From NCBI RefSeq assembly GCF_004010195.1, contig NC_057746.1:9486142-9550141 (forward strand): a DNA stretch of 64,000 nt. Reading direction: 5' to 3'. Positions 1 to 21,613 of this stretch are shown here, in pieces. The position numbers and the translations under genes were made by a program. The DNA is from Chiloscyllium plagiosum. Taxonomy: Eukaryota. How positions within the stretch are numbered: position 1 is the first letter of the stretch; each line of letters starts with the position of its first letter. The notes under the pieces are model-generated. The model saw nothing but the letters and a program-made list of their open reading frames with translations. It was not told the DNA's origin and ran no database searches.

Positions 1-262
1 TGTAGTAAACCCCTAACGAGGTGACTGCGCTCTTGCTGTTCCTAATTTCCACCCAAACCGACTTGGTAGGCAGATCTTCCTCAACAATGGAAGCTTCTGT
101 AGCTGTGATACCCTCTGTGAGTAGTGCCACACCCCCTCCTCTTTTTCCCCCCTCCCCTATTCTTTTAAATGCTCTAAACCCTGGAACATCCAGCAACCAT
201 TCCTGCCCCTGAGAAACCCATGTCTCTGTTATGGCCACAACATCATTGCACCAGGTACTGAT
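1..262 (-). mobile_element. CR1-type LINE ORF2 AP-endonuclease fragment
   Basis: Minus-strand reading gives DVVAITETWV...DVPGFRAF...RGGGVALL...SVWVEIRN...LGVYY, typical APE motifs; truncated by the window start. Confidence 0.8.
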
Positions 263-263
263 C

Positions 264-1830
264 CAACTGGCTAAATACTTCAGCCAGTTCAGGAATCAGA
301 TTTTTCGCCTCCAGAAAAAAAAAAGGAGCAGAAACCAACAGTGACACACTGACTGTAGCACCAGCCAGCACAGGGTCAGTCCCCTAAATTGAGAAGACCT
401 CTGAATCTCCTGTTTATTTATTTTTGGATTTTTTCCTGTTTATAATATTTTATTAAACAAATTACGAAACACAGTTTACAAAAAACAGTTAACATTTACA
501 GCTGGTTACAACAGCAATTTTACAAGGGAGAGGAGCAGCAAAGCCAGAGCCCAAACCCTACTGTTCAATCAGTTTACAGGGAGAGGAGGACAAACCTCAA
601 ATCCCAGTTCCACAGATAAAAGACAGCGACAATGACATTTGTACATAAAAAGCTAATCCAGTGCATACAATACAGACCCAGCAAGCCCCCATCCCTCCCA
701 CTCTAAGGCAGCCCACCCCTACGTACCTTCCAGCTCTCGATCCACCCCATGCCCCTTCCATTTCTGGTCTGCCCTGACACACCTTTCGACCACCTCTAGG
801 GCAGCCCACCCCGGTACCTGCCCAGGGTGACAGCTCTGAGGACGGCTACCCGCCTTCTGGCTCTCAGTCTGCCCCTACGTACCATTGGGCTCTTACTCAC
901 CCCGATGCGCCATCCGGCCAGTGGGCTATCCTGGCACACCTTCCAGCCCATCCCCTTCCCTGGAACGACAGCGTGCAGGGTAGCCCACAAGCCTTCCAGA
1001 TCTCAGCCCGCCCCTAAGCGCCTTCTGGCTCTCGGCTGCTCTGACACACCTTTCGACCACCTCTAGGACAGCCCACCCCGATCACCCCTTTTCAGGACGA
1101 CAGTGCTCAGAACAGCCTCCCCACCACCTGGCTCACAGCAAACGCACACAGGTGTTCAGTCTCCATGCAGTCCTGGCACATCCTTGGAGAGCCAGGCCCA
1201 CTCACAGGAACACAGTATATTTTAAAGGTGCAGTTAACTCACAGGGGTTTTTGGTTCACTCCTGAAGGCAAGATCTTCTCCAGAACTCCAGGATATAGCA
1301 ATTGCTCACCTCCCAGCGCGTGCACACACACACATAGGTGTTCAATCTTCAGAGGTCGAGGCCCAGTCCTAGGCCTCCCCACAGGAACAGCTCCTCTGGT
1401 AAAAAAATGTCTTCCACAAGGGCTCAGTCCAAACACCAAAAACAGTGAGGATACGTACAAAAAGCAAAGAAAACTAGAGTTCAAGGCATAAGTCCTATCA
1501 CAAAATTAAACATTGTCCTTTCCTCAAAAGAGTAACACACAGGCTGTAACCAACCAGTGAAACAGCAATCCCCTAATGTGAGCTGAGTTACACCTGAAAC
1601 ACATTATGTGCATCAGGAGTTTAACAATCAATCCTCACTGAAAGGAATGCCAGTTAACAAACTGGCTAAATAATTCAGCCAGTTCAGGAATCAGATTTTC
1701 CCCCTCCAGAAAAAAGGGAAGCAGAAACTAACAGTAACACACTGACTGTAACACCAGCCAGCACAGGGTCAGTCCCCTAAATTGAGAAGACCTCTGAAAC
1801 TCCTGTTTATTTATTTATTTATTCCTGTTT
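264..1830 (-). repeat. ~185 bp direct repeats (264-~450 and ~1660-1830) flanking a ~1.2 kb internally repetitive segment; probable head-to-tail non-autonomous retroelement
   Basis: actggctaaata...ccagccagcacagggtcagtcccctaaattgagaagacctctgaa occurs twice ~1.4 kb apart; T-rich tail-like sequence at 415-455; the internal repeat ctgacacacctttcgaccacctctagg occurs at ~773 and ~1041. Confidence 0.6.
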
Positions 1831-4099
1831 ATTCAGGATTCCCTGATTAGACCAGGTTAACAGCCCCAGTTAGGGAACTCACATTCTATGATGTCCATCT
1901 GGCTTTGTGAGAAACACTACAATGTTGAACTACCTTCTTGTACTACTGCAGTTCTAGTGCTGTTGGTTGTTTTTAAAGAGGACGTTCCAGGGTTTTGACT
2001 CAGCCACATTGAATGAATGATATATTTTCAGGTCAGGATGGTGAGCGGCTTGGAGGGGAAATTGCAGCTGAGGGCATTCCCTTGTATCTGCTGCCCTTGT
2101 CCTTCTAAATTATTGTGGTTGTGGGTTTGGAAAACTTTTTTGGGCAAGTAATAATTGTCATGATTTGAGTTTGTTAGAGCTAAAGGCTGCAGTGTTCCTT
2201 CTCCTCTTCCTAACTCACACAGTGTTTGTACAATTTGAAGAATTATTACTACTTGAGGGTTGTGGTATATCTGACATTTTTTTAGAATATGAAGGTGGGT
2301 TCTCATTGGATTTGTATTCATGCTTTAAGCACGAATGTTTATTTGATCTTCAGAAGATGTGGTGTGTTGCTCCAGTAACATGCAGATTTCTATTACATAT
2401 TTAGCACAGGTGCACATTCAACCTTCAAGAGCATTCACATGTTTTTAGTATTTGTTCACAGGATTTGTGTATCGCTGGCTGGTCCCAGTATTTATTGCTC
2501 ATTTGTAATTGCCCAGCATGTAGCTAAGGGTCAGCTACATTGCTGTGGGTCTTGCACCACTTGTTGGTAAGGACAGCAGATTTCCCTCCCTCAAGCGTAT
2601 TAATGAATTAGCTGGGCTTTTACAACAATTGACAGAAAATTTATTGAATTCAAATTTCATCGTCTCCCATGGTGAAATTCAAACACGTCCTCGGAGCAAT
2701 GGTCTAGGGTACTGGATAATACTATTCCAGTGACATAACTATTACACCATCTCCACCACTTTCATTGTGTGTGAAGTGGCATTTTTTTGTCGCTAACTAA
2801 AGGAACAGAAAGGCAATAAGGAATTGGATGCACAACTTACTACATTTGTGTCTAACTTGTCTCCAAAGGTCATAGAATTATAACAGTGCAGAAAAAGGCA
2901 ATTTAGTCCATCGTATCTGCATTAACTCCCTTGAATGAACATCGAGGTTTGATTGCCAGGCTCCCATTTATTTTCTATCATTTTCATTTAAATCACTAAT
3001 GCTTTGTTGAATGTCTCAGTTGCCTCACACTTCCAGGCAGTGCATTTGAGACCCAAAGCACTTTTCCTTCTCATCATGTATTGATCAAGTTTGCAAGTCA
3101 CTCTGACCTGCACCCTCGTCTTGAGCCTTTTATGAGCAGGAACAGATAATCCTCGTCTACTCTTTTCAGACCTTTCATGACCTCAGTCAGATCTGCTTTT
3201 GGACAACTTCCTGTGGAAAAGCAGAACTGACTTTTCGGGATTTTCCTAGGTCTGTGGGTGACCCCCAGTGAACATGACAAGTGCAGTTTCCAGAGCAAAG
3301 TTTTTCTCCAGTTCAGTGTGTGCCTATCTGAATGCATACACAGCTAAATGATTCACAAAAATTCTCATCAGAACAACCTGGAATGTTTGCTTAACTCCCA
3401 AAGTCACCACACTGATTATTTCTCTGAATGCAAGCAACTGATATTGAAGCAAAGATTAAAGATGAAGTTTGTGTTAAACTGGAGACCCAGAATTTGATTG
3501 TGTTCAGTGTTATGGTGATGATTTGTGAGCTTCCATACACACTTACTGACTGACCATGTCCAAGTTCCTGGACTAGTAGTGAAGAGTGGCTCCCACTGAC
3601 GTGTCAAAGGACGGCTTCCTTTCAACTTTGTGATCTTGCCATTTACTTGCAACCTGATTTTGCTACATACACGCTGTCATATGTGGCACATTTGTTATTG
3701 ACATGTTATCATAATGAGCAGCAACATGAGACTTATGACTTCTGATAAGTGTGACAAGCTTTCTGGCTTGATGTGTGTGCTAAAAGGCAAGTTGCAACAA
3801 AGGTACTGAGCATATATTGTGCTGTTGATGAAGAAGAATGCCATAGGCAAGGCACTGTGGTGATGGTGTGAACATTCAGGGAGCTGCTAAGTGAGTGAGC
3901 TTAAAGGGAGTATGCAAGCAGCCCTGAGATGCAGCCTGGTCTAATGCAGAACTGGGTGTTAGTCCAAATGTCCATGGTATCCCTGCAGCTGCAGTTGTAG
4001 GTGTGACCCAATGTACAGCATGGGAGTGCACAAGCCTCTGTCAGTGGATCAGAGTCAGAGGTGTGCTATGGCAGTGCACAGAGTCTGAAACGTATCAGT

Positions 4100-4512
4100 G
4101 TTTATGCTTAGAAAATCATGCGGGGTATAGATAGGATTAATGGTGCCTCTCTTTTCACTAGGTTGGTGGGGATTTCAAGATTCAAGATTTCACGGGGTAC
4201 ATTTTTAAGGTGAGAAGAGAGAGATTAACAAAAGACATGAGGTTTTGCAAAAAAGGTGGTTCATGTGTGGAATGAACTTCCAGAGGAAGTGGTGAATACA
4301 GGCAAAGTTACGATGTTTAAAATATATTTAGACAAGAACATGAATAGGAAAGACTTGGAGGGATACGGGTCAGGAGCATCGACGACTTCTATCCAGAAGG
4401 GTTAAAGGCCAGGAGCAGGTAGGTGGGGCTAGTTTAGTTTGTGATTATATTTGGCAAGGACTGATTGGACTGAAGAGTCTGTTTCCATGCTGTATGACTC
4501 TATGACTCTATA
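4100..4512 (+). mobile_element. CR1/HER1-like LINE 3' end
   Basis: Characteristic 3' sequence (gtgtggaatgaacttccagaggaagtggtg...) ending in a ctgtatgactctatgactcta tandem tail. Confidence 0.7.
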
Positions 4513-5047
4513 ACTCTCCCTGGATAGGATCTTCAAAACTCAAGCCTTGACTCTCCAGTCTGGAAGGCTGAAGGCAGCAGATACATGAAAGCGTCATTGC
4601 CTGCGTGTTACTGTCCACCCCACACACCATTCAACCTATGTCACCATTCCTTCATTGTCACCAAATCAAATTCCTGGAGCTCCATTCAACACCACACATT
4701 ATCATAAAGTATGATTGTTGGAACAAATTTCTTGAACATAGACACATTCTTCTCAACAAATATGTTTTCTCAGGCTTTTTCTGTTTGTGTTTATTGAAGG
4801 ACTTTAACTTTCTGTGTAATGTGTCATAACTTGCTTATCATTTCAAACCTTTCAGTAAGCTGTAATCAATTCTGAAGAAGGGACCCTGGACTTGAATCAT
4901 TAACTCTGTTTTCTCTCTCCAGCTGCAGCAGTTTCTCCTTTAGTTTCAGATCTCCATCATCCACGGTTCTTTATTTTGTTGTAGTTTTATGATAATTCTA
5001 GTGTTTGATTGGTTAATTTTAAGGTTTTTCTTTTTGCTTTCTTCCAG

Positions 5048-5308
5048 AGTCTCACTCTCTGCTCTATCAGTACAATCTCAATCATGGGGACAAAGACCTA
5101 CCGGAGTACAGTGTCCTGGGAATTTTGGATGACTGCGAGATATTCTATTTTGACAGCAATATGAAAATAACCATTCCAAGGCAACAATGGTTGGTGGACG
5201 CATTTGACAAGGCTTACTGGGATGAGTGCACTATCACTGAAGTTGGGTTCCATGGACTAATCAAGGGACAGGCTGATGGATGGCTCCAGAAAGAAAATCA
5301 AACATCAC
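5048..5308 (+). CDS. Non-classical MHC class I heavy chain, alpha1 exon
   Basis: Acceptor ttccag|AG, donor C|gtgagt; 261 nt, phase 1/1. Encodes (E)SHSLLYQY...PEYSVLGILDDCEIFYFDSN...PRQQWL...YWDE...KENQTS, with the class I HSLxY start, FDS, PRxxW, YW and the N86 sequon NQT. Confidence 0.93.
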
Positions 5309-5696
5309 GTGAGTTTATCCATTTGAAGTCATTGCAGTGAGGTTCAGACATGATATTCATGTTAGATTATAGTGTGCACCAGGAGTGTTGAACTATTCTG
5401 CTGTCTGTTTGACCTTTCCTTCCCTTTCCCTTTCTGCATCCAGCTTGGTTTTCCTTGACCTTTCCCTTTTTAAAAAAAAAATTACTTCTGCCATGTGTGC
5501 ATCGCTGGCTGGGCAGGTAACTGTTGTGCTGTACCTGATAATGCTTGTACACTTGTTTCATGTACTTCACTCAGTACTTAACTAATGATGAGAATAACTG
5601 GGTGTGAAGTAACAAAGGGAAAACTGAAATTCTCGGATTTGATTTGATCAGAGACAATAAATGTTGAAGGACTCATGCACTGAATTAATGTTTTAG

Positions 5697-5972
5697 GTAC
5701 CCATTACCTACAAGGACTATTTGGCTGTGAACTACATGAGGCCACTCCGAGTGAAGGGATTTTGAAGTTTGCTCTTGATGGCAAATACATCCTCAGCTTT
5801 GACAAAGATGCATTAGTTTGGATTGTACATGATCCAGTTGCAGAGGAATTCAAAACAAAATGGGATAAGGAAACAAAGCTGAACCATTACTTCAAGAATC
5901 TGCTGGAAAATGATTGTATAGATCAATGGAAGGCAATCTATTTCTTTGGAAATGCCTCTTTAAGCAGAAAAA
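5697..5972 (+). CDS. Non-classical MHC class I heavy chain, alpha2 exon
   Basis: ttttag|GT ... A|gtaagt; 276 nt, phase 1/1. RTHYLQGLFGCEL...FALDGKYILSFD...W...KTKWD...LENDCIDQW...SRK, retaining the C101/C164-equivalent pair. Confidence 0.95.
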
Positions 5973-6146: not shown

Positions 6147-6413
6147 TTTCTCCTGAGGTCTCACTTATTGCCAAGGATGGCCATCACTGGTTCCTGCACT
6201 GCATTGTGATTGGATTTTACCCACAGTCCATCAATGTGACCTGGTTGAAGAATGGAAAACATGCCGATGAGACGACCTCTACTGGGTTATTGCCCAATGA
6301 AGATGGGACTTTCCAACTGAAGACAACCCTCCAATTTGACCCGTATGATGGCAACCAATATGCTTGTCATATTGAGCACAGCAGCATCCCGGGTGGAAAG
6401 ACTGTCCTGTGGG
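6147..6413 (+). CDS. Non-classical MHC class I heavy chain, alpha3 (Ig C1) exon
   Basis: atacag|TT ... G|gtaagt; 267 nt. LHCIVIGFYPQSINVTWLKNG...LPNEDGTFQ...YACHIEHSS are the C1-set motifs. Confidence 0.96.
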
Positions 6414-7356: not shown

Positions 7357-9020
7357 GTCATAGAGATGTACAACATGCAAACAGACCCTTTGGTCCAAAT
7401 CATCCATGCAGACCAGTTATCCTAAATTAATCTACTCCCATTTGCCAGCATTTGGCTCATATCCCTCAAAACTCTTCCTATTCATGTGCTCACACAGATG
7501 CCTTTTAAATGTTGTAATTGTACCAGCCTCTGCCATCTCCTCTGTAACTCATTCCATATACACAGTCCTTTGTGTGATAAAGTTGCCCTTTGTTCTGTTT
7601 GGTATCTTTTCCCCTCTCACCGTAAATCCGTGTCCTCTAGTTTTGGAACTCTGCTACCCTGAGGAAAAGTCCTTGACTATTCACCCAATCCATGCCCCTC
7701 ATGAATTTATAAACCTCTATAAGGTCAGGTTCTGGTACGCCAGTGAAAATATGCCCAGCCTATTCAGCCTCTGCACAGCCAAAACACTTCAATCCCAGCA
7801 ACATCCTCGAAAATGTTTTCTGCACACGTTCAAGTTTAACAGCATCTTTTTTATAGTACAGAGACCAGAACTGAATGTAATATTCCAAGACTGGCCCTGT
7901 ACAGCTGCAACATGACATCCCAACTCCTATGCTCCATATACTGGTCAATAAAAGCAAGTGTACCAAATGCCGCCTTCTACCCGTGCTTTCAACTTCAAAA
8001 AACTGTAAATCGGCTGCCTTATTGAAATGCAATATCCTCTACAGTTTATCTCAACTAAACTCCATCTGCCACTTCTCAGTCTATTGTCCATCTGATCAAG
8101 TCCTACTGTACCCTGAGGTTATCTTCTTCACTGCTCACCATGCCACCAATTTCGGTGACATCTGCAAACTCACTAACCATTCTGCTATGTTCACGTCTAA
8201 GTCATTTGTATAAATGTCAAAAAGCAGTGGATCCAGCACCAATCCTTCTGATACACCTCAGATCAAATGACTCCAGCCTGAAAAAAAGCCCTCTACCACC
8301 ACCTTGTGTCTTCTACCTTCAAGCCAACTTTGTAACCAAATAGCTCGCTCTCCCTGGATTCCATGCAATCTAACCTTGCTAACCAGTCGATTATGTGGAA
8401 CTTGTTGAACCCCTTGCTGAAGTCCAGAAAGACAAAGTCCACCGTTTTGCCTTCATCAGTTTTTTTTTGCCACTTCCTCAAAAAACTCAGTCAAGTTAGT
8501 GAGAGATGATTTCCCACTCACAAAACCATATTGACTATTCCTACTCTGTGCTGAAAATGTGTTGCTGGAAAAGCGCAGCAGGTCAGGCAGCATCCAAGGA
8601 ACAGGAGAATCGACGTTTCGGGCATAAGCCCTTATTCCTACTCTGTCCTTAACTTCCCAAATACAAAAAAACCCAACTCCTGCAACAACTTTCCCACCAC
8701 TGATATCAGGCTTGTCAGTTGATAGCTCCCTGGCTTTTCCTTACCACCCTTCTTAAATAACAGCATCACATTATCCACCTTACAACCTTTCAGCACCTCG
8801 CCCATGGCTATTGACGATAGAAATATCTCAGCAGGGGACCGTGCATTCATTTCCATAGCTTCCCACAAAGATTTGGGATACACCCGATCATGTCCTGGGT
8901 CTTTATCCACCATTATGTATTTTAAGGTGTCCAGTACCACCTGCTCTGTAATAAGGACCCATTTCAACATATGACCATTTATTTCTCTAAGTTGTTTAGC
9001 TTCCATATCCTGCACACTGC
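7357..9020 (-). mobile_element. Decayed CR1/HER1-like LINE (RT and 3' end)
   Basis: Minus ORF fragments KKGGKEKPGSYQLTSLISVVGKLL, VDFVFLDFSKGF and LEYYIQFWS...LERVQKTFSRM. Confidence 0.85.
8550..8632 (-). mobile_element. 83 bp Penelope-like repeat fragment inserted in the CR1 with a 14 bp TSD
   Basis: TSD tattcctactctgt at 8536-8549 and 8633-8646; the insert reads aagggcttatgcccgaaacgtcg... on the minus strand. Confidence 0.75.
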
Positions 9021-9039
9021 TGCTACTGAGCATCGGTGG

Positions 9040-11560
9040 TGGAGAAAGTGGATGCTTTGAGGATATAGTGCCATTCAAGTGGGTTGCTTTGTGCCGGTGG
9101 TGTCAAGCTTCTTGAGTGTTGTTGGAGCTGTGCTTATTCAGTCAAATGAGGAATATTCCATCACATTCCTGACTTGTGCCTTGTAGATGGTGGATAGGAT
9201 TTTGGGAGTCAGGAGGTGAGTAACCCGCTGCAGTATTCCTGGCCCCTTACCTGCTCTTGTAGACACTGCATTTATGTGGTGAGTCCAGTTGAGTTTCTGA
9301 TCAATGATAACTCCGAAGATGTTGAAGATAGGGGATTCAGTGATGGCAATGCTATTGAATATCAAGGGCAGTGCCTAAATTGTCTCTTGTGGTTATGGTC
9401 ACAGAGTGTCCTTTATGTGGCATGAATGTTACTTGCTACTTATTAGTCCAAGCCTGGATATTGTCCAGGTTTTGTTGCATTTGAACAAGGACTGTTTCAG
9501 TGTCTGAGAGTTGTGAATGGTGCTGAACATTTTGCAATCATCAGTGGAACATCCCCCACTTCTGAATTTACAAAGAAGGCAAGATTATTGATGAAGCAGC
9601 TGAAGATGTTTGGGCCTAGGACACTACCCTGAGGAACTCCTGCAGAGATGTCCTGGAGCTAAACTGACTGACCTCCAACCACCACGGTCACCTTCCTATG
9701 TGTCAGGTATGACTCTATCCACTGGACAGCTTTCCCCCAATACCCATTGATTCTAGTTTTGCTCGGGCTCCATGATGCCACACTCATTCAAACGTAGCGT
9801 TGATGTCAAGGGCTGTCACTCTCACCTCACCTCTGGAATTCAGCTCTTTTGTCCATGTTTGAAACCAGACTGAAATGAGATCAGGAGCTGAGTGGCCCTG
9901 GTAGAACCCAAACTGGGCATCACTGAGAAAGTTATTGCTGAGCAAGTGCTGCTTGAGAGCACTGTTGAAAACACTTTCCATCACTATACTGATGATCGGG
10001 ATTTGGCTGATGGGACAGTAATTGGCTGGGTTGGATTTGTCCTGCATTTTATGTGCAGGACATACTGGGCAGTTTTCTAAATTGTCAGGAAGATGCCAGT
10101 GTTGTAACTGTACTGGAACAGTTTGGCTTAGGGATCAGTAAGTTCTGGAGTACAAGGCTTCAGTACTGCTGCTCAAATGTTTTCAGGGCCCATAGCCTTT
10201 GCAGTATCAGGTGCCTCCAGCCATTTCTTGATGACAAATGGAGTGAATCAAATTGACTGAAGACTGATAACTGTAATGCTGGGGACCACTGGAGGAGGCT
10301 GAGATGGATCATCCACTCTGCACTTTTAACTGAAAATTTCTGCGAATGTTTGAGCCTTATCTTTCACACTGACATGTTGGGCTCTTCCATCATTGAGGAT
10401 TGGGATATTTGTGGAGCCTCCTCCTCCAGTGAGTTATTCAATCATCCACCATCAATCACGAATGGATGTGGCAGGACTGCAGAGCTTATGTATGAACCGT
10501 TGTTTGTAGAATCGCTTTGCTCTATCTATCAGTTGCTCCTTTTCTTTGAGTGCAAGTAGTCCTATTTGGTGGCTTTGCCAGGTTGACACCTCATCTTCAG
10601 GTATGCCTGGTGCTGCTCCTGGCATGCCCTCCTGTTCTCTCCATTGAACCAAGGTTGAGTGGGCTATATACCGGGCCATGAAGTTACAGCCTGTGATGGT
10701 GTACAGTTCTGCTGCTGTTGGTTGCTCATGTGCCTCTTGGATGTGCAGCCTTGAGTGGCTAGATCTGTTCGAAGTCTGTCCCATTGAGCACAGTGATAGT
10801 GACACACAGCGATGAAGGTTATTCTCAAGTGAAGGTGGGACTTTGTCTCCACAAGAGCTGTGCAGTGGTCACTCTTACTAGTACTGTCGTGGACAGATGC
10901 ATCTGCAGCTGGCAGGTTGGTAAAGATGAGGTCAAGTCTGTTTTCTCGTCTTGCTGGTTCCTTCTCCACCTGCCACATGCCCAGTCTAGCAGTTATGTCC
11001 TTTAGGACCCGACCAGCTTGATCAATAGTGCTGCTCCTGCTGACGCACTCTTGGTCATTGAAATTGCCCACCCAGAGTATATTATGTGCCCTTACCATCC
11101 TCAGTGCTTCCTTGAAGTGTTGTTCAACATGGAGGAGTTCGGATTCATCAGGTGAGGCAGGGCGGTACATTGTAATCAGCAGGAGATTTCATTGTCTATG
11201 TTTAACCTGAAGCCATGAGATTGCATGGAATCCAGAGTCAATGTTGAGGACGCCCAGGGAAACTCCTTCCTGACTGTATACCACTGTGCCACCACCTCTG
11301 CTAGCTCTGTCCTGCTGGAGAGACAGGACATATCCAGGGACAGCAATGGTGGCATCTGGGGTGTTGTCTGTAAGGCATAATTTCATGAGTATGACTATGT
11401 CAGTCTGTTGCTTGACTAGTCCGTTGGGCAGCCCTCCCAATTTTAGCACTAAACTTCAGATGTTAGTGAGGAGGCGTTTACAAGGTCGACTGGACTGTTT
11501 CTGCCGTTGACTTTTCTGGTGCCTGATGATCCATCCAGTTTAATTTCTTTGTACAATTGA
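9040..11560 (-). mobile_element. Decayed L2/CR1-clade LINE, APE + RT
   Basis: Minus ORF fragments VPGYVLSLQQDRASRGGGTVVY, YRP...WVGNFN...LDLIFTN...SDHC, NPANYCPIS...QFGFYQGHSAPD...ALDI and GVIIDQKLNWTHHI. Confidence 0.88.
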
Positions 11561-14222: not shown

Positions 14223-14327
14223 AAGGAAAAGTGAAGGATAGCAACAATGTGGGGATGATTGTCTTGGCTGTACTCGTTTCACTAGCAATCATTGTTATCA
14301 TATTTATATGGTGGAGAAGACGAAGAG
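14223..14327 (+). CDS. MHC class I connecting peptide/transmembrane exon
   Basis: tttttcag|AA ... G|gtatgc; 105 nt, phase 1/1, in frame with alpha3. EGKVKDSNNVGMIVLAVLVSLAIIVIIFIWWRRRR is a 22-residue hydrophobic helix followed by a basic stop-transfer signal. Confidence 0.88.
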
Positions 14328-19339: not shown

Positions 19340-19356
19340 ATTACAGTGTTGTTTAA
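19340..19356 (+). CDS. Candidate terminal cytoplasmic exon of the MHC class I gene (DYSVV*)
   Basis: Strong polypyrimidine acceptor tttattttcctttctctag|; phase 1 join gives GAT TAC AGT GTT GTT TAA; followed by AT-rich non-repetitive UTR-like sequence. Confidence 0.6.
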
Positions 19357-20723: not shown

Positions 20724-21613
20724 TTATTTCTGTAAATTACTGACAAAATTCAATGGATATTTAAGTAGATTCTTTAACTGCTGTCTGAATTTAGTCTGGG
20801 AAACTGCATAAATAATGGTGTTTGTGCAAGAACTCAAATGTTGCAGCATGTAGCCTGCTTGCTCCATAATGGTGAAAGGATTACTATAATCTGTGTGCAA
20901 GTATTCCACATCCATAATTTGCACACATATGTAGTGAGTAAATGTGACTACCCACAGCAGTATAAAGCTGCCAGATATCGCTAATAGTAAAACAATAGAT
21001 TTCCATCGGTTTTCCATTTCTGGGTCTTTGTCACTGCTCCGGAGTCCCTTCCTGATCCTGCTTGTGAGTAGAATATGCCTGATGGTCAGGCTATTGAATA
21101 TAAGGATCAAGAGAAAGGGAATAAAAGGCATGAATGTGATATCAATCCATAGAAATGTAACCCACAGAGGGACAGTGTACAGACTTAATTTTACATTGCA
21201 GAACCATAATGTATCATCAATTATTACACGCGGTTCAAATGTAAAGTAAATTGGAATGTTTTCCAGGGTGCTGAATACCCATATCATAGTCACAACTACT
21301 GCTGCAGTTTTTGCAGTGCAATATTGTGTTCTTGTTTTTTGACAACAAATGGCAATAAATCTGTCAAAGGTGAAAGCTACAGTCAACCAGACAGAACATT
21401 CAATAGAAGCAAAAATTAGGAAGAAATTCAGACTGCAGACAGGTGTATAGTCCAGGAAGGAATCTGGGAAATAAATTTCATTCATCTCATAAATAACCAC
21501 ATCAAAAATGAGGACTAGTAGATCTGCTGCTGCCATGGATACCAGATAAATTGTGATGCATTTGGAGAGGCCACATTTTCCACGGGAGAGAATCACAATT
21601 GTCACCAAATTGG
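20724..21613 (-). CDS. GPR139/GPR142-like orphan class A GPCR, gene 1, exon 2
   Basis: 294-aa ORF with TM1 end to TM7: MAAADLLVL, CSVWLTVAFTFDRF, FILLW, SSCTNTIIYAVSQTKFR; acceptor ttcttctccacttacag|CC. Confidence 0.92.

What the first reader, a model, noticed from the sequence alone, without database searches (positions are those of the whole stretch)
5048..5972. Shark non-classical MHC class I with dismantled peptide anchors and a hydrophobic groove: candidate lipid-presenting (CD1-like) molecule
Seen (manual alignment to HLA-A2 numbering): Y7, Y59, K146 and W147 are kept and position 84 is K, but T143>F, Y159>L, W167>Q, Y171>I, Y123>I and D122>Y. Predicted groove-facing residues are largely apolar: floor L5, Y9, V24, L95, G97, F99, L114, F116, L118, I123, L124; alpha1 helix F70, L73, I74, W81. 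Established: classical class I molecules from sharks to mammals conserve the terminal-anchoring set, whereas CD1 replaces it with a hydrophobic cavity; true CD1 is known from amniotes. Inference: this gene presents lipid or other hydrophobic ligands. It is either a convergent CD1 analogue or a member of one of the shark non-classical U-lineages; I cannot assign the lineage without a search.
Basis: partly seen in the sequence, partly recalled or inferred. Interest (0 to 1): 0.8.

Follow-up and report, generated by a model that had tools for sequence, protein, structure and literature searches.

The report
Shark UGA non-classical class I gene
This is an intact, expressed shark gene of the non-classical MHC class I lineage called UGA, a CD1-like molecule thought to display lipids instead of peptides, and specialists already know the lineage.

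Summary
Window 5048-5972 (+) carries the alpha1 (5048-5308) and alpha2 (5697-5972) exons of an intact MHC class I-like gene. The alpha3, transmembrane and tail exons lie at 6147-6413, 14223-14327 and 19340-19356. Contigs of four public runs confirm the splicing. All five exon peptides are exact substrings of a public 332-aa bamboo-shark protein (P0182).

The lineage can be assigned. P0182 matches PDB 9CH4, "Crystal structure of shark nonclassical MHC CLASS I, UGA" (released 2026-03-18), without gaps at 79-80% identity (E 1.6e-152, Z 30.7). Orthologues in sharks and rays form one clade with 100/100 support. A 2025 review, citing a personal communication, says UFA and UGA are CD1-like and that crystal and mass-spectrometry data suggest lipid binding.

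My additions:
- The tail ends in a CD1-style YxxPhi sorting motif, found in 17 of 23 family rows.
- By sequence the gene is class I, not CD1 (Pfam MHC_I 76 bits; CD1-type model 19.6, below its cut-off of 35).
- 35 of 42 groove positions equal the crystallised UGA.

I did not see lipid binding itself. The scan also noted similar candidates about 30-49 kb and 419 kb upstream in this genome; I did not check them.

The parts
5048..5308 (+). alpha1 exon (phase 1; acceptor AG at 5046-5047, donor GT at 5309-5310)
   Evidence: Sequence; translation; exact substring of P0182; PDB 9ch4_A E 9.8e-46; spliced joint 5308>5697 in 4 of 4 runs.
5697..5972 (+). alpha2 exon (276 nt, phase 1)
   Evidence: Translation; Pfam MHC_I 47.4 bits; 9ch4_A E 1.4e-44; exon-sized contigs 5697-5972 and joint 5972>6147 in X13 and X14.
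6147..6413 (+). alpha3 exon (Ig C1-set domain)
   Evidence: Translation; Pfam C1-set 68.1 bits; 9ch4_A E 1.9e-50. Loose ends behind 6413 in X13 and X14 equal the first 30 letters of the exon at 14223.
14223..14327 (+). connecting peptide, transmembrane helix and basic stop-transfer run (ends WWRRRR)
   Evidence: Sequence; exact substring of P0182; tblastn of family proteins; model helix 300-330.
19340..19356 (+). last coding exon: end of the cytoplasmic tail (D)YSVV plus stop codon (19354-19356); YxxPhi motif
   Evidence: Sequence; exact substring of P0182; motif present in 17 of 23 family rows.

Best explanation
The gene is the bamboo-shark orthologue of UGA, a single- or low-copy non-classical MHC class I lineage of sharks and rays. 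It encodes a type I membrane heavy chain (alpha1-alpha2 platform, alpha3 Ig domain, one transmembrane helix, 9-residue tail).

Shown here: the identity of the gene, its intact exons, its splicing and its conservation.

Inferred: the groove has lost half of the residues that clamp peptide ends and is lined mostly by apolar side chains, with glycines at 69, 76 and 97 that make room. It would therefore hold acyl chains or other hydrophobic ligands rather than 8-11mer peptides. The short tail ends in a YxxPhi motif, as in CD1b, CD1c and CD1d. This would send the molecule from the surface through endosomes, where lipids are exchanged, before display to T cells. It works like CD1 but is a class I lineage by sequence.
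For: - Identity. The five exon peptides are exact substrings of P0182. P0182 residues 25-292 align without gaps to 9ch4_A (E 1.6e-152). Foldseek ranks 9CH4 ('shark nonclassical MHC CLASS I, UGA') first with TM 0.95 and 79% identity. VIA gives Z 30.7, rmsd 1.6 over 268 residues.
- Groove versus the crystallised UGA. 35 of 42 groove positions are identical (read from the alignment).
- Family. 18 of 18 hits at E<=1e-20 come from elasmobranchs. The 23 family rows form one clade (100/100) whose branching follows shark and ray taxonomy.
- Groove chemistry. Within the family F99, L114, F156 and L159 are 23/23; G97, I74 and W81 are 22/23; F/L/M at 143 is 21/23. Mean hydropathy of the 42 positions is 0.78 in the family and 0.11 in 12 other class I rows; for the whole alpha1-alpha2 domain it is -0.52 versus -0.80.
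- Tail. YxxPhi occurs in 17 of 23 rows. The role of this motif in CD1 trafficking is described in PMC11481681 (passages).
- Expression. GT..AG joints are seen in 4 of 4 runs.
- Literature. PMC12562908 and PMC10751288, passages read.
Against: - No ligand was seen here. The tools return no coordinates, so cavity size and openness were not measured for the model or for 9CH4.
- The lipid statement in print is a personal communication quoted in a review.
- By sequence the gene is nearer to peptide-binding class I and MR1 than to CD1. No CD1 chain is among the best 60 PDB sequence matches. Pfam MHC_I_3 scores 19.6 bits against a cut-off of 35.
- Y7, Y59, K146 and W147 are kept.
- Fold neighbours after 9CH4 are tied: ZAG 25.6, chicken CD1-1 25.4, HFE 25.3, class I 25.1-25.3.
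- Groove positions are not more conserved than the rest of the domain (0.773 versus 0.744, permutation p 0.26).
- The hydropathy ranges of the two groups overlap, and the rows are related, so this is no statistical test.
Confidence: 0.75

Rival explanations
1. A non-classical class I molecule that still binds peptides or lipopeptides with an unusual anchoring mode, as chicken YF1*7.1 does with N-myristoylated peptides.
For: Four of nine terminal-anchor residues are kept (Y7, Y59, K146, W147). The nearest sequences after UGA are peptide-binding fish, shark and bird class I. YF1 (Rfp-Y) chains match the alpha2 exon at E 1.9e-10. A paper on YF1*7.1 presenting lipopeptides appeared in a search listing only (PMC12212280).
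Against: T143, Y159, W167, Y171 and Y123 are replaced by apolar or non-equivalent residues, and position 84 varies across the family (K/Q/R/E). The review reports lipids.
Confidence: 0.12
2. An MHC-like molecule that presents nothing: its groove is closed or constitutively filled, and it acts as a receptor, ligand or carrier, like HFE, FcRn or ZAG.
For: ZAG (Z 25.6) and HFE (Z 25.3) tie with CD1 and class I as fold neighbours. ZAG also matches the alpha2 exon by sequence (E 3.3e-10).
Against: Apolar groove residues are conserved across sharks and rays. The protein has a membrane anchor and an endosomal sorting motif. The review reports bound lipids.
Confidence: 0.07
3. An MR1-like presenter of small metabolites.
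For: MR1 chains are among the best PDB sequence matches (E 1.1e-50 to 4e-41). NCBI names several orthologues 'MHC class I-related gene protein-like'.
Against: The lysine that forms the Schiff base in MR1 (K43, numbering recalled) aligns with T in this protein. The MR1 E-values for fusion chains are inflated by an extra beta2-microglobulin match. The groove is broadly apolar.
Confidence: 0.04

Closest known systems
Shark UGA (PDB 9CH4, 'Crystal structure of shark nonclassical MHC CLASS I, UGA', released 2026-03-18)
   Same: The alignment of alpha1-alpha3 is gapless at 79-80% identity (E 1.6e-152, TM 0.95, Z 30.7). 35 of 42 groove positions are identical.
   Different: It comes from another species. 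Seven groove positions differ (HLA numbering 24 V/I, 34 F/Y, 73 L/I, 80 G/E, 124 L/F, 167 Q/L, 171 I/Y). Five changes cluster at the end of the alpha2 helix in the bamboo/epaulette-shark rows.
Shark UFA (PDB 8GM8, 'shark nonclassical MHC CLASS I, UFA', released 2024-11-27)
   Same: It is a non-classical elasmobranch class I that is called CD1-like in print, with the same fold (Z 21.6).
   Different: Only 26% identity in the structural alignment. By sequence only alpha1 residues 1-61 match, at E 1.8e-10. It is a different lineage.
CD1 (amniotes)
   Same: An apolar groove without the peptide-end clamps; a short tail ending in YxxPhi; a beta2-microglobulin-type alpha3 domain. Chicken CD1-1 scores Z 25.4 and human CD1d Z 22.7.
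   Different: Pfam's CD1-type model is below threshold (19.6 versus 35 bits), while MHC_I passes (76.3). No CD1 chain is among the best 60 PDB sequence matches. Orthology was not tested.
Classical shark class I (UAA; PDB 6LUP)
   Same: Same domain architecture and exon phases, with 33% identity. Y7, Y59, K146 and W147 are shared.
   Different: T143, Y159, W167, Y171 and Y123 are replaced. W/R97 is replaced by G. The tail is short and carries a sorting motif.

Membership tests
Elasmobranch UGA lineage | Close, full-length similarity to the molecule deposited as UGA | tested here: met
   P0182 residues 25-292 align to 9ch4_A residues 1-268 without gaps, E 1.6e-152. Identity is 79-80%, TM 0.95, Z 30.7. 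Each exon alone scores E 1e-44 to 1e-50.
Elasmobranch UGA lineage | One clade with the shark and ray orthologues, apart from other class I | tested here: met
   The 23 family rows form a clade with 100/100 support on a stem of 1.08, and rays are monophyletic at 100/100. The 9CH4 sequence itself could not be put in the tree. Named UAA, UBA, UDA, UEA and CD1 rows were not available.
Elasmobranch UGA lineage | [quoted passage not shown] | tested here: inconclusive
   There is one class I gene in the 64-kb window. Most species have one gene; Pristis and Pristiophorus have three. Linkage cannot be seen within the window. Unchecked scan notes place a class II region 8.3 Mb away on the same piece.
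Elasmobranch UGA lineage | Binds lipids | not testable with these tools
   The only source is a statement in a review that cites a personal communication (PMC12562908).
MHC class I superfamily | alpha1-alpha2 platform plus a C1-set alpha3 domain; C101-C164 disulfide | tested here: met
   Pfam MHC_I scores 76.3 bits (cut-off 28.3) and C1-set 64.4 bits. Both cysteines are invariant in A1. The model has pLDDT 85.
Classical class I (UAA type) | Conserved set that binds peptide termini (Y7, Y59, Y/R84, T143, K146, W147, Y159, W167, Y171; list recalled) | tested here: not met
   Four of nine are kept. Position 84 is K. Positions 143, 159, 167 and 171 are F, L, Q and I.
Classical class I (UAA type) | High polymorphism | tested here: inconclusive
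   Contigs of two further runs show one synonymous difference in alpha1 and none in alpha2 or alpha3. Contigs drop variants and the sample is tiny. The sister species differs at 4 of 332 residues.
CD1 | Sequence membership (Pfam PF16497 above its cut-off; CD1 among nearest relatives) | tested here: not met
   Pfam PF16497 scores 19.6 bits against a cut-off of 35. No CD1 chain is among the best 60 PDB sequence matches.
CD1 | Tyrosine-based YxxPhi endosomal sorting motif in a short tail | tested here: met
   The tail RRRRDYSVV ends the protein. The motif is in 17 of 23 family rows. Its role in CD1 is described in PMC11481681.
CD1 | Deep hydrophobic pockets that hold acyl chains | tested here: inconclusive
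   By sequence, 25 of 42 mapped groove positions in P0182 are A, V, L, I, M, F, W or C (0.595). No coordinates were available, so no cavity was measured.
MR1 | Schiff-base lysine K43 (numbering recalled) | tested here: not met
   The aligned residue is T (alignments to MR1 chains).

The most novel reading that the evidence does not exclude
UGA and amniote CD1 descend from one ancestral lipid-presenting gene rather than being convergent. The short YxxPhi tail and endosomal loading route would then be retained ancestral traits, so lipid presentation is as old as peptide presentation, with loss in bony fish and amphibians. A smaller variant of this reading: the bamboo/epaulette-shark UGA has remodelled one end of its groove (167 Q, 171 I, two added phenylalanines) and has shifted its ligand range.
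Probability: 0.3. Interest if true: 0.7.

Novelty: already known. Interest (0 to 1): 0.3.

Why it matters
A CD1-like lipid presenter in sharks would push non-peptide antigen presentation back to the origin of jawed vertebrates. That point is already being made by the groups that named UFA and UGA and deposited their structures. This window adds an intact, expressed orthologue with its full exon map. It also shows that the CD1-style sorting tail is conserved from sharks to rays, and it lists seven groove differences from the crystallised molecule.

Tried and rejected
- Leader exon. I looked for it in window 1-5047 by exact 8-mers and by ungapped BLOSUM scoring of P0182's first 24 residues. The best score was 9, so it is not there and must lie upstream of the window.
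- Paralogues. tblastn of the gene's own exons against the window found none.
- Groove conservation. I tested whether groove positions are more conserved than the rest of alpha1-alpha2. They are not (0.773 versus 0.744, p 0.26).
- Fold ranking. I had hoped it would separate CD1 from class I. ZAG, CD1-1, HFE and class I are tied within one Z unit.
- ESM Atlas. It returned only generic MHC_I clusters.
- Primary paper on UGA. Seven literature searches found none. It may exist in a journal the library does not hold. Supplementary files were not consulted.
- CD1 in the tree. No CD1 sequence or named shark UAA/UBA/UDA/UEA sequence was available from a tool, and I did not type any from memory. The tree therefore says nothing about CD1 orthology.
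- Joined step. Whole-protein searches, the alignment and the fold used the public protein P0182, which contains the five exon peptides exactly.

Full report
**What is there.**
Window 5048-5972 on the + strand holds two exons, 5048-5308 and 5697-5972. Both are phase 1 and have AG/GT borders. They translate to 86 and 91 residues without stops. A third exon, 6147-6413, gives an 88-residue Ig domain. Pfam assigns MHC_I to the first two (23 and 47.4 bits) and C1-set to the third (68.1 bits). A connecting-peptide and transmembrane exon lies at 14223-14327, and a last coding exon at 19340-19356 ends the protein in ...WWRRRR-DYSVV-stop. tblastn with the gene's own exons finds no second class I gene in the 64 kb.

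**Gene model and expression.**
A public 332-aa protein, P0182 (source name 'class I histocompatibility antigen, F10 alpha chain-like', Chiloscyllium plagiosum), came back from a cluster look-up. It contains all five exon peptides as exact substrings. I used it by id for whole-protein work.
- Its first 24 residues (the leader) are not encoded in window 1-5047, so the leader exon lies upstream of the window.
- Contigs of four public runs carry the joint 5308>5697 (4 of 4 runs) and 5972>6147 (2 of 4), both GT..AG.
- In two runs, loose ends behind 6413 equal the first 30 letters of the exon at 14223.
- A loose end before 5047 in one run translates to the last ten residues of P0182's leader with one difference.
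- The gene is therefore transcribed and spliced as modelled.
- In the two deeper runs the three ectodomain exons show a single synonymous difference (place 5097). This is weak evidence of low polymorphism, because contigs drop variants.

On alignment A1 (23 family rows and 12 other class I rows), with HLA-A2 numbering recalled, every call was reproduced.
- Kept: Y7, Y59, K146, W147.
- Position 84 is K.
- Changed: 143 F, 159 L, 167 Q, 171 I, 123 I, 122 Y.

In the 12 other class I rows the classical residues dominate: T143 9/12, Y159 10/12, W167 10/12, W or R at 97 10/12.

Two qualifications apply. A W and a Y sit one position further along (168, 172). Most orthologues keep Y171 (17/23) and have L at 167 (19/23), so Q167 and I171 are special to the three bamboo/epaulette-shark rows.

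**Which lineage.**
- Each exon matches PDB chain 9ch4_A far better than anything else. The E-values are 9.8e-46, 1.4e-44 and 1.9e-50, against 1e-10 to 1e-13 for the next unrelated chains of alpha1 and alpha2.
- P0182 residues 25-292 align to 9ch4_A residues 1-268 without a gap, E 1.6e-152.
- An AlphaFold model of P0182 (pLDDT 85, pTM 0.67) hits 9CH4 first in Foldseek (TM 0.95, 79% identity) and in the Foldseek-independent search (Z 30.7, rmsd 1.6, 268 residues).
- The entry's title is 'Crystal structure of shark nonclassical MHC CLASS I, UGA', released 2026-03-18.
- The entry titled '...UFA' (8GM8) is a distant relative (Z 21.6, 26% identity).
- The gene is therefore the UGA orthologue of this shark.

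**The family.**
- An exhaustive HMMER search with the alpha2 exon found 406 proteins at E<=0.001 and only two cluster representatives at E<=1e-30.
- A search with one of these returned 18 proteins at E<=1e-20 among 2108 candidates. All carry shark or ray source names, covering 13 species.
- Cluster look-ups added whale shark, epaulette shark, catsharks, white shark and thorny skate.
- In a maximum-likelihood tree the 23 family rows form one clade (100/100) on a long stem. Rays, carpet sharks, and mackerel plus ground sharks are each supported groups.
- This pattern fits one old gene with a few local duplications (three genes each in Pristis and Pristiophorus).
- No CD1 or named shark lineage sequences were available, so the tree says nothing about CD1.

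**How it probably works.**
- *Shown:* a class I heavy chain whose groove-lining positions are apolar and strongly conserved across the family. F99, L114, F156 and L159 are 23/23; G97, I74 and W81 are 22/23; 143 is F/L/M in 21/23.
- Mean hydropathy over the 42 mapped positions is 0.78 in the family and 0.11 in the other rows. For the whole domain it is -0.52 versus -0.80. The ranges overlap and the rows are related, so this is descriptive only.
- 35 of the 42 positions equal the crystallised UGA (alignment).
- The tail carries YxxPhi in 17 of 23 rows: YSVV/YNIV-type at the very C-terminus in sharks, YQNI/YENI-type in rays. The six rows without it are alternative isoforms, extra paralogues or doubtful C-terminal models.
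- The same motif type steers CD1b, CD1c and CD1d through endosomes (PMC11481681, passages).
- *Inferred:* UGA pairs with beta2-microglobulin, reaches the surface, is internalised through the tyrosine motif, exchanges lipids in endosomes and displays them to T cells.
- *In print:* Verissimo et al. 2023 describe UFA as 'very similar to CD1' from unpublished data (PMC10751288, passages). A 2025 review says that UFA and UGA are CD1-like and that crystal and mass-spectrometry analyses suggest lipids like those of human CD1d, citing a personal communication (PMC12562908, passages).

**Against, and limits.**
- I saw no ligand and no coordinates, so cavity volume is unmeasured.
- By sequence UGA is class I or MR1-like, not CD1. 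Pfam MHC_I scores 76.3 bits and MHC_I_3 19.6, below its cut-off of 35. No CD1 chain is among the best 60 PDB sequence matches.
- Structural neighbours after 9CH4 are tied.
- Groove positions are not more conserved than the rest of the domain (p 0.26).
- The MR1 Schiff-base lysine aligns with T.
- No primary UGA paper was found. Supplements were not consulted.

**Verdict.**
The gene belongs to a lineage that is already named, crystallised and described as CD1-like, so novelty is low.

Noticed in passing
window 20724-21608 (-), 39893-40783 (+), 58131-59024 (+): Three intronless rhodopsin-type GPCR ORFs of 294-297 aa (Pfam 7tm_1, 55-83 bits). The last two are 98% identical and lie in a duplicated segment (blastn 78-94% over several kb). 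In little skate a 'probable G-protein coupled receptor 139' lies beside the UGA orthologue and is fused to it in some gene models, which suggests conserved synteny.
   Followed up: partly
P0182 mature residues 164-171 (window about 5920-5945): The three bamboo/epaulette-shark rows share a cluster of changes at the end of the alpha2 helix: 167 L>Q, 170 T>A, 171 Y>I, 173 S>F, 174 I>F/V relative to the crystallised UGA and most orthologues. This may be a lineage-specific reshaping of one end of the groove.
   Followed up: partly
about 30-49 kb and about 419 kb before the window's start (outside the window): Earlier scan notes report two more intact non-classical class I genes with hydrophobic, anchor-less grooves nearby (s1-885809, s1-885825), and a class II region 8.3 Mb away on the same piece. 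One of them could be UFA or a UGA paralogue. I could not read that DNA.
   Followed up: no
window 5139-5141 and 5232-5234 (alpha1 exon): There are two extra cysteines in alpha1 (HLA positions 31 and 63). The first is present in 20 of 23 family rows and the second in only 8 of 23. Whether they pair is unknown.
   Followed up: no
window 8638-9078 (-), 10664-11170 (-), 59852-60298 (-): These ORFs look by eye like fragments of retrotransposon reverse transcriptase or endonuclease, lying in the long intron and in the intergenic DNA. They were not scanned against any library.
   Followed up: no
window 14328 onward: The sister species has annotated isoforms that read through or past the donor of the transmembrane exon. 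Their tails differ and lack the YxxPhi motif (P0154, P0180).
   Followed up: no
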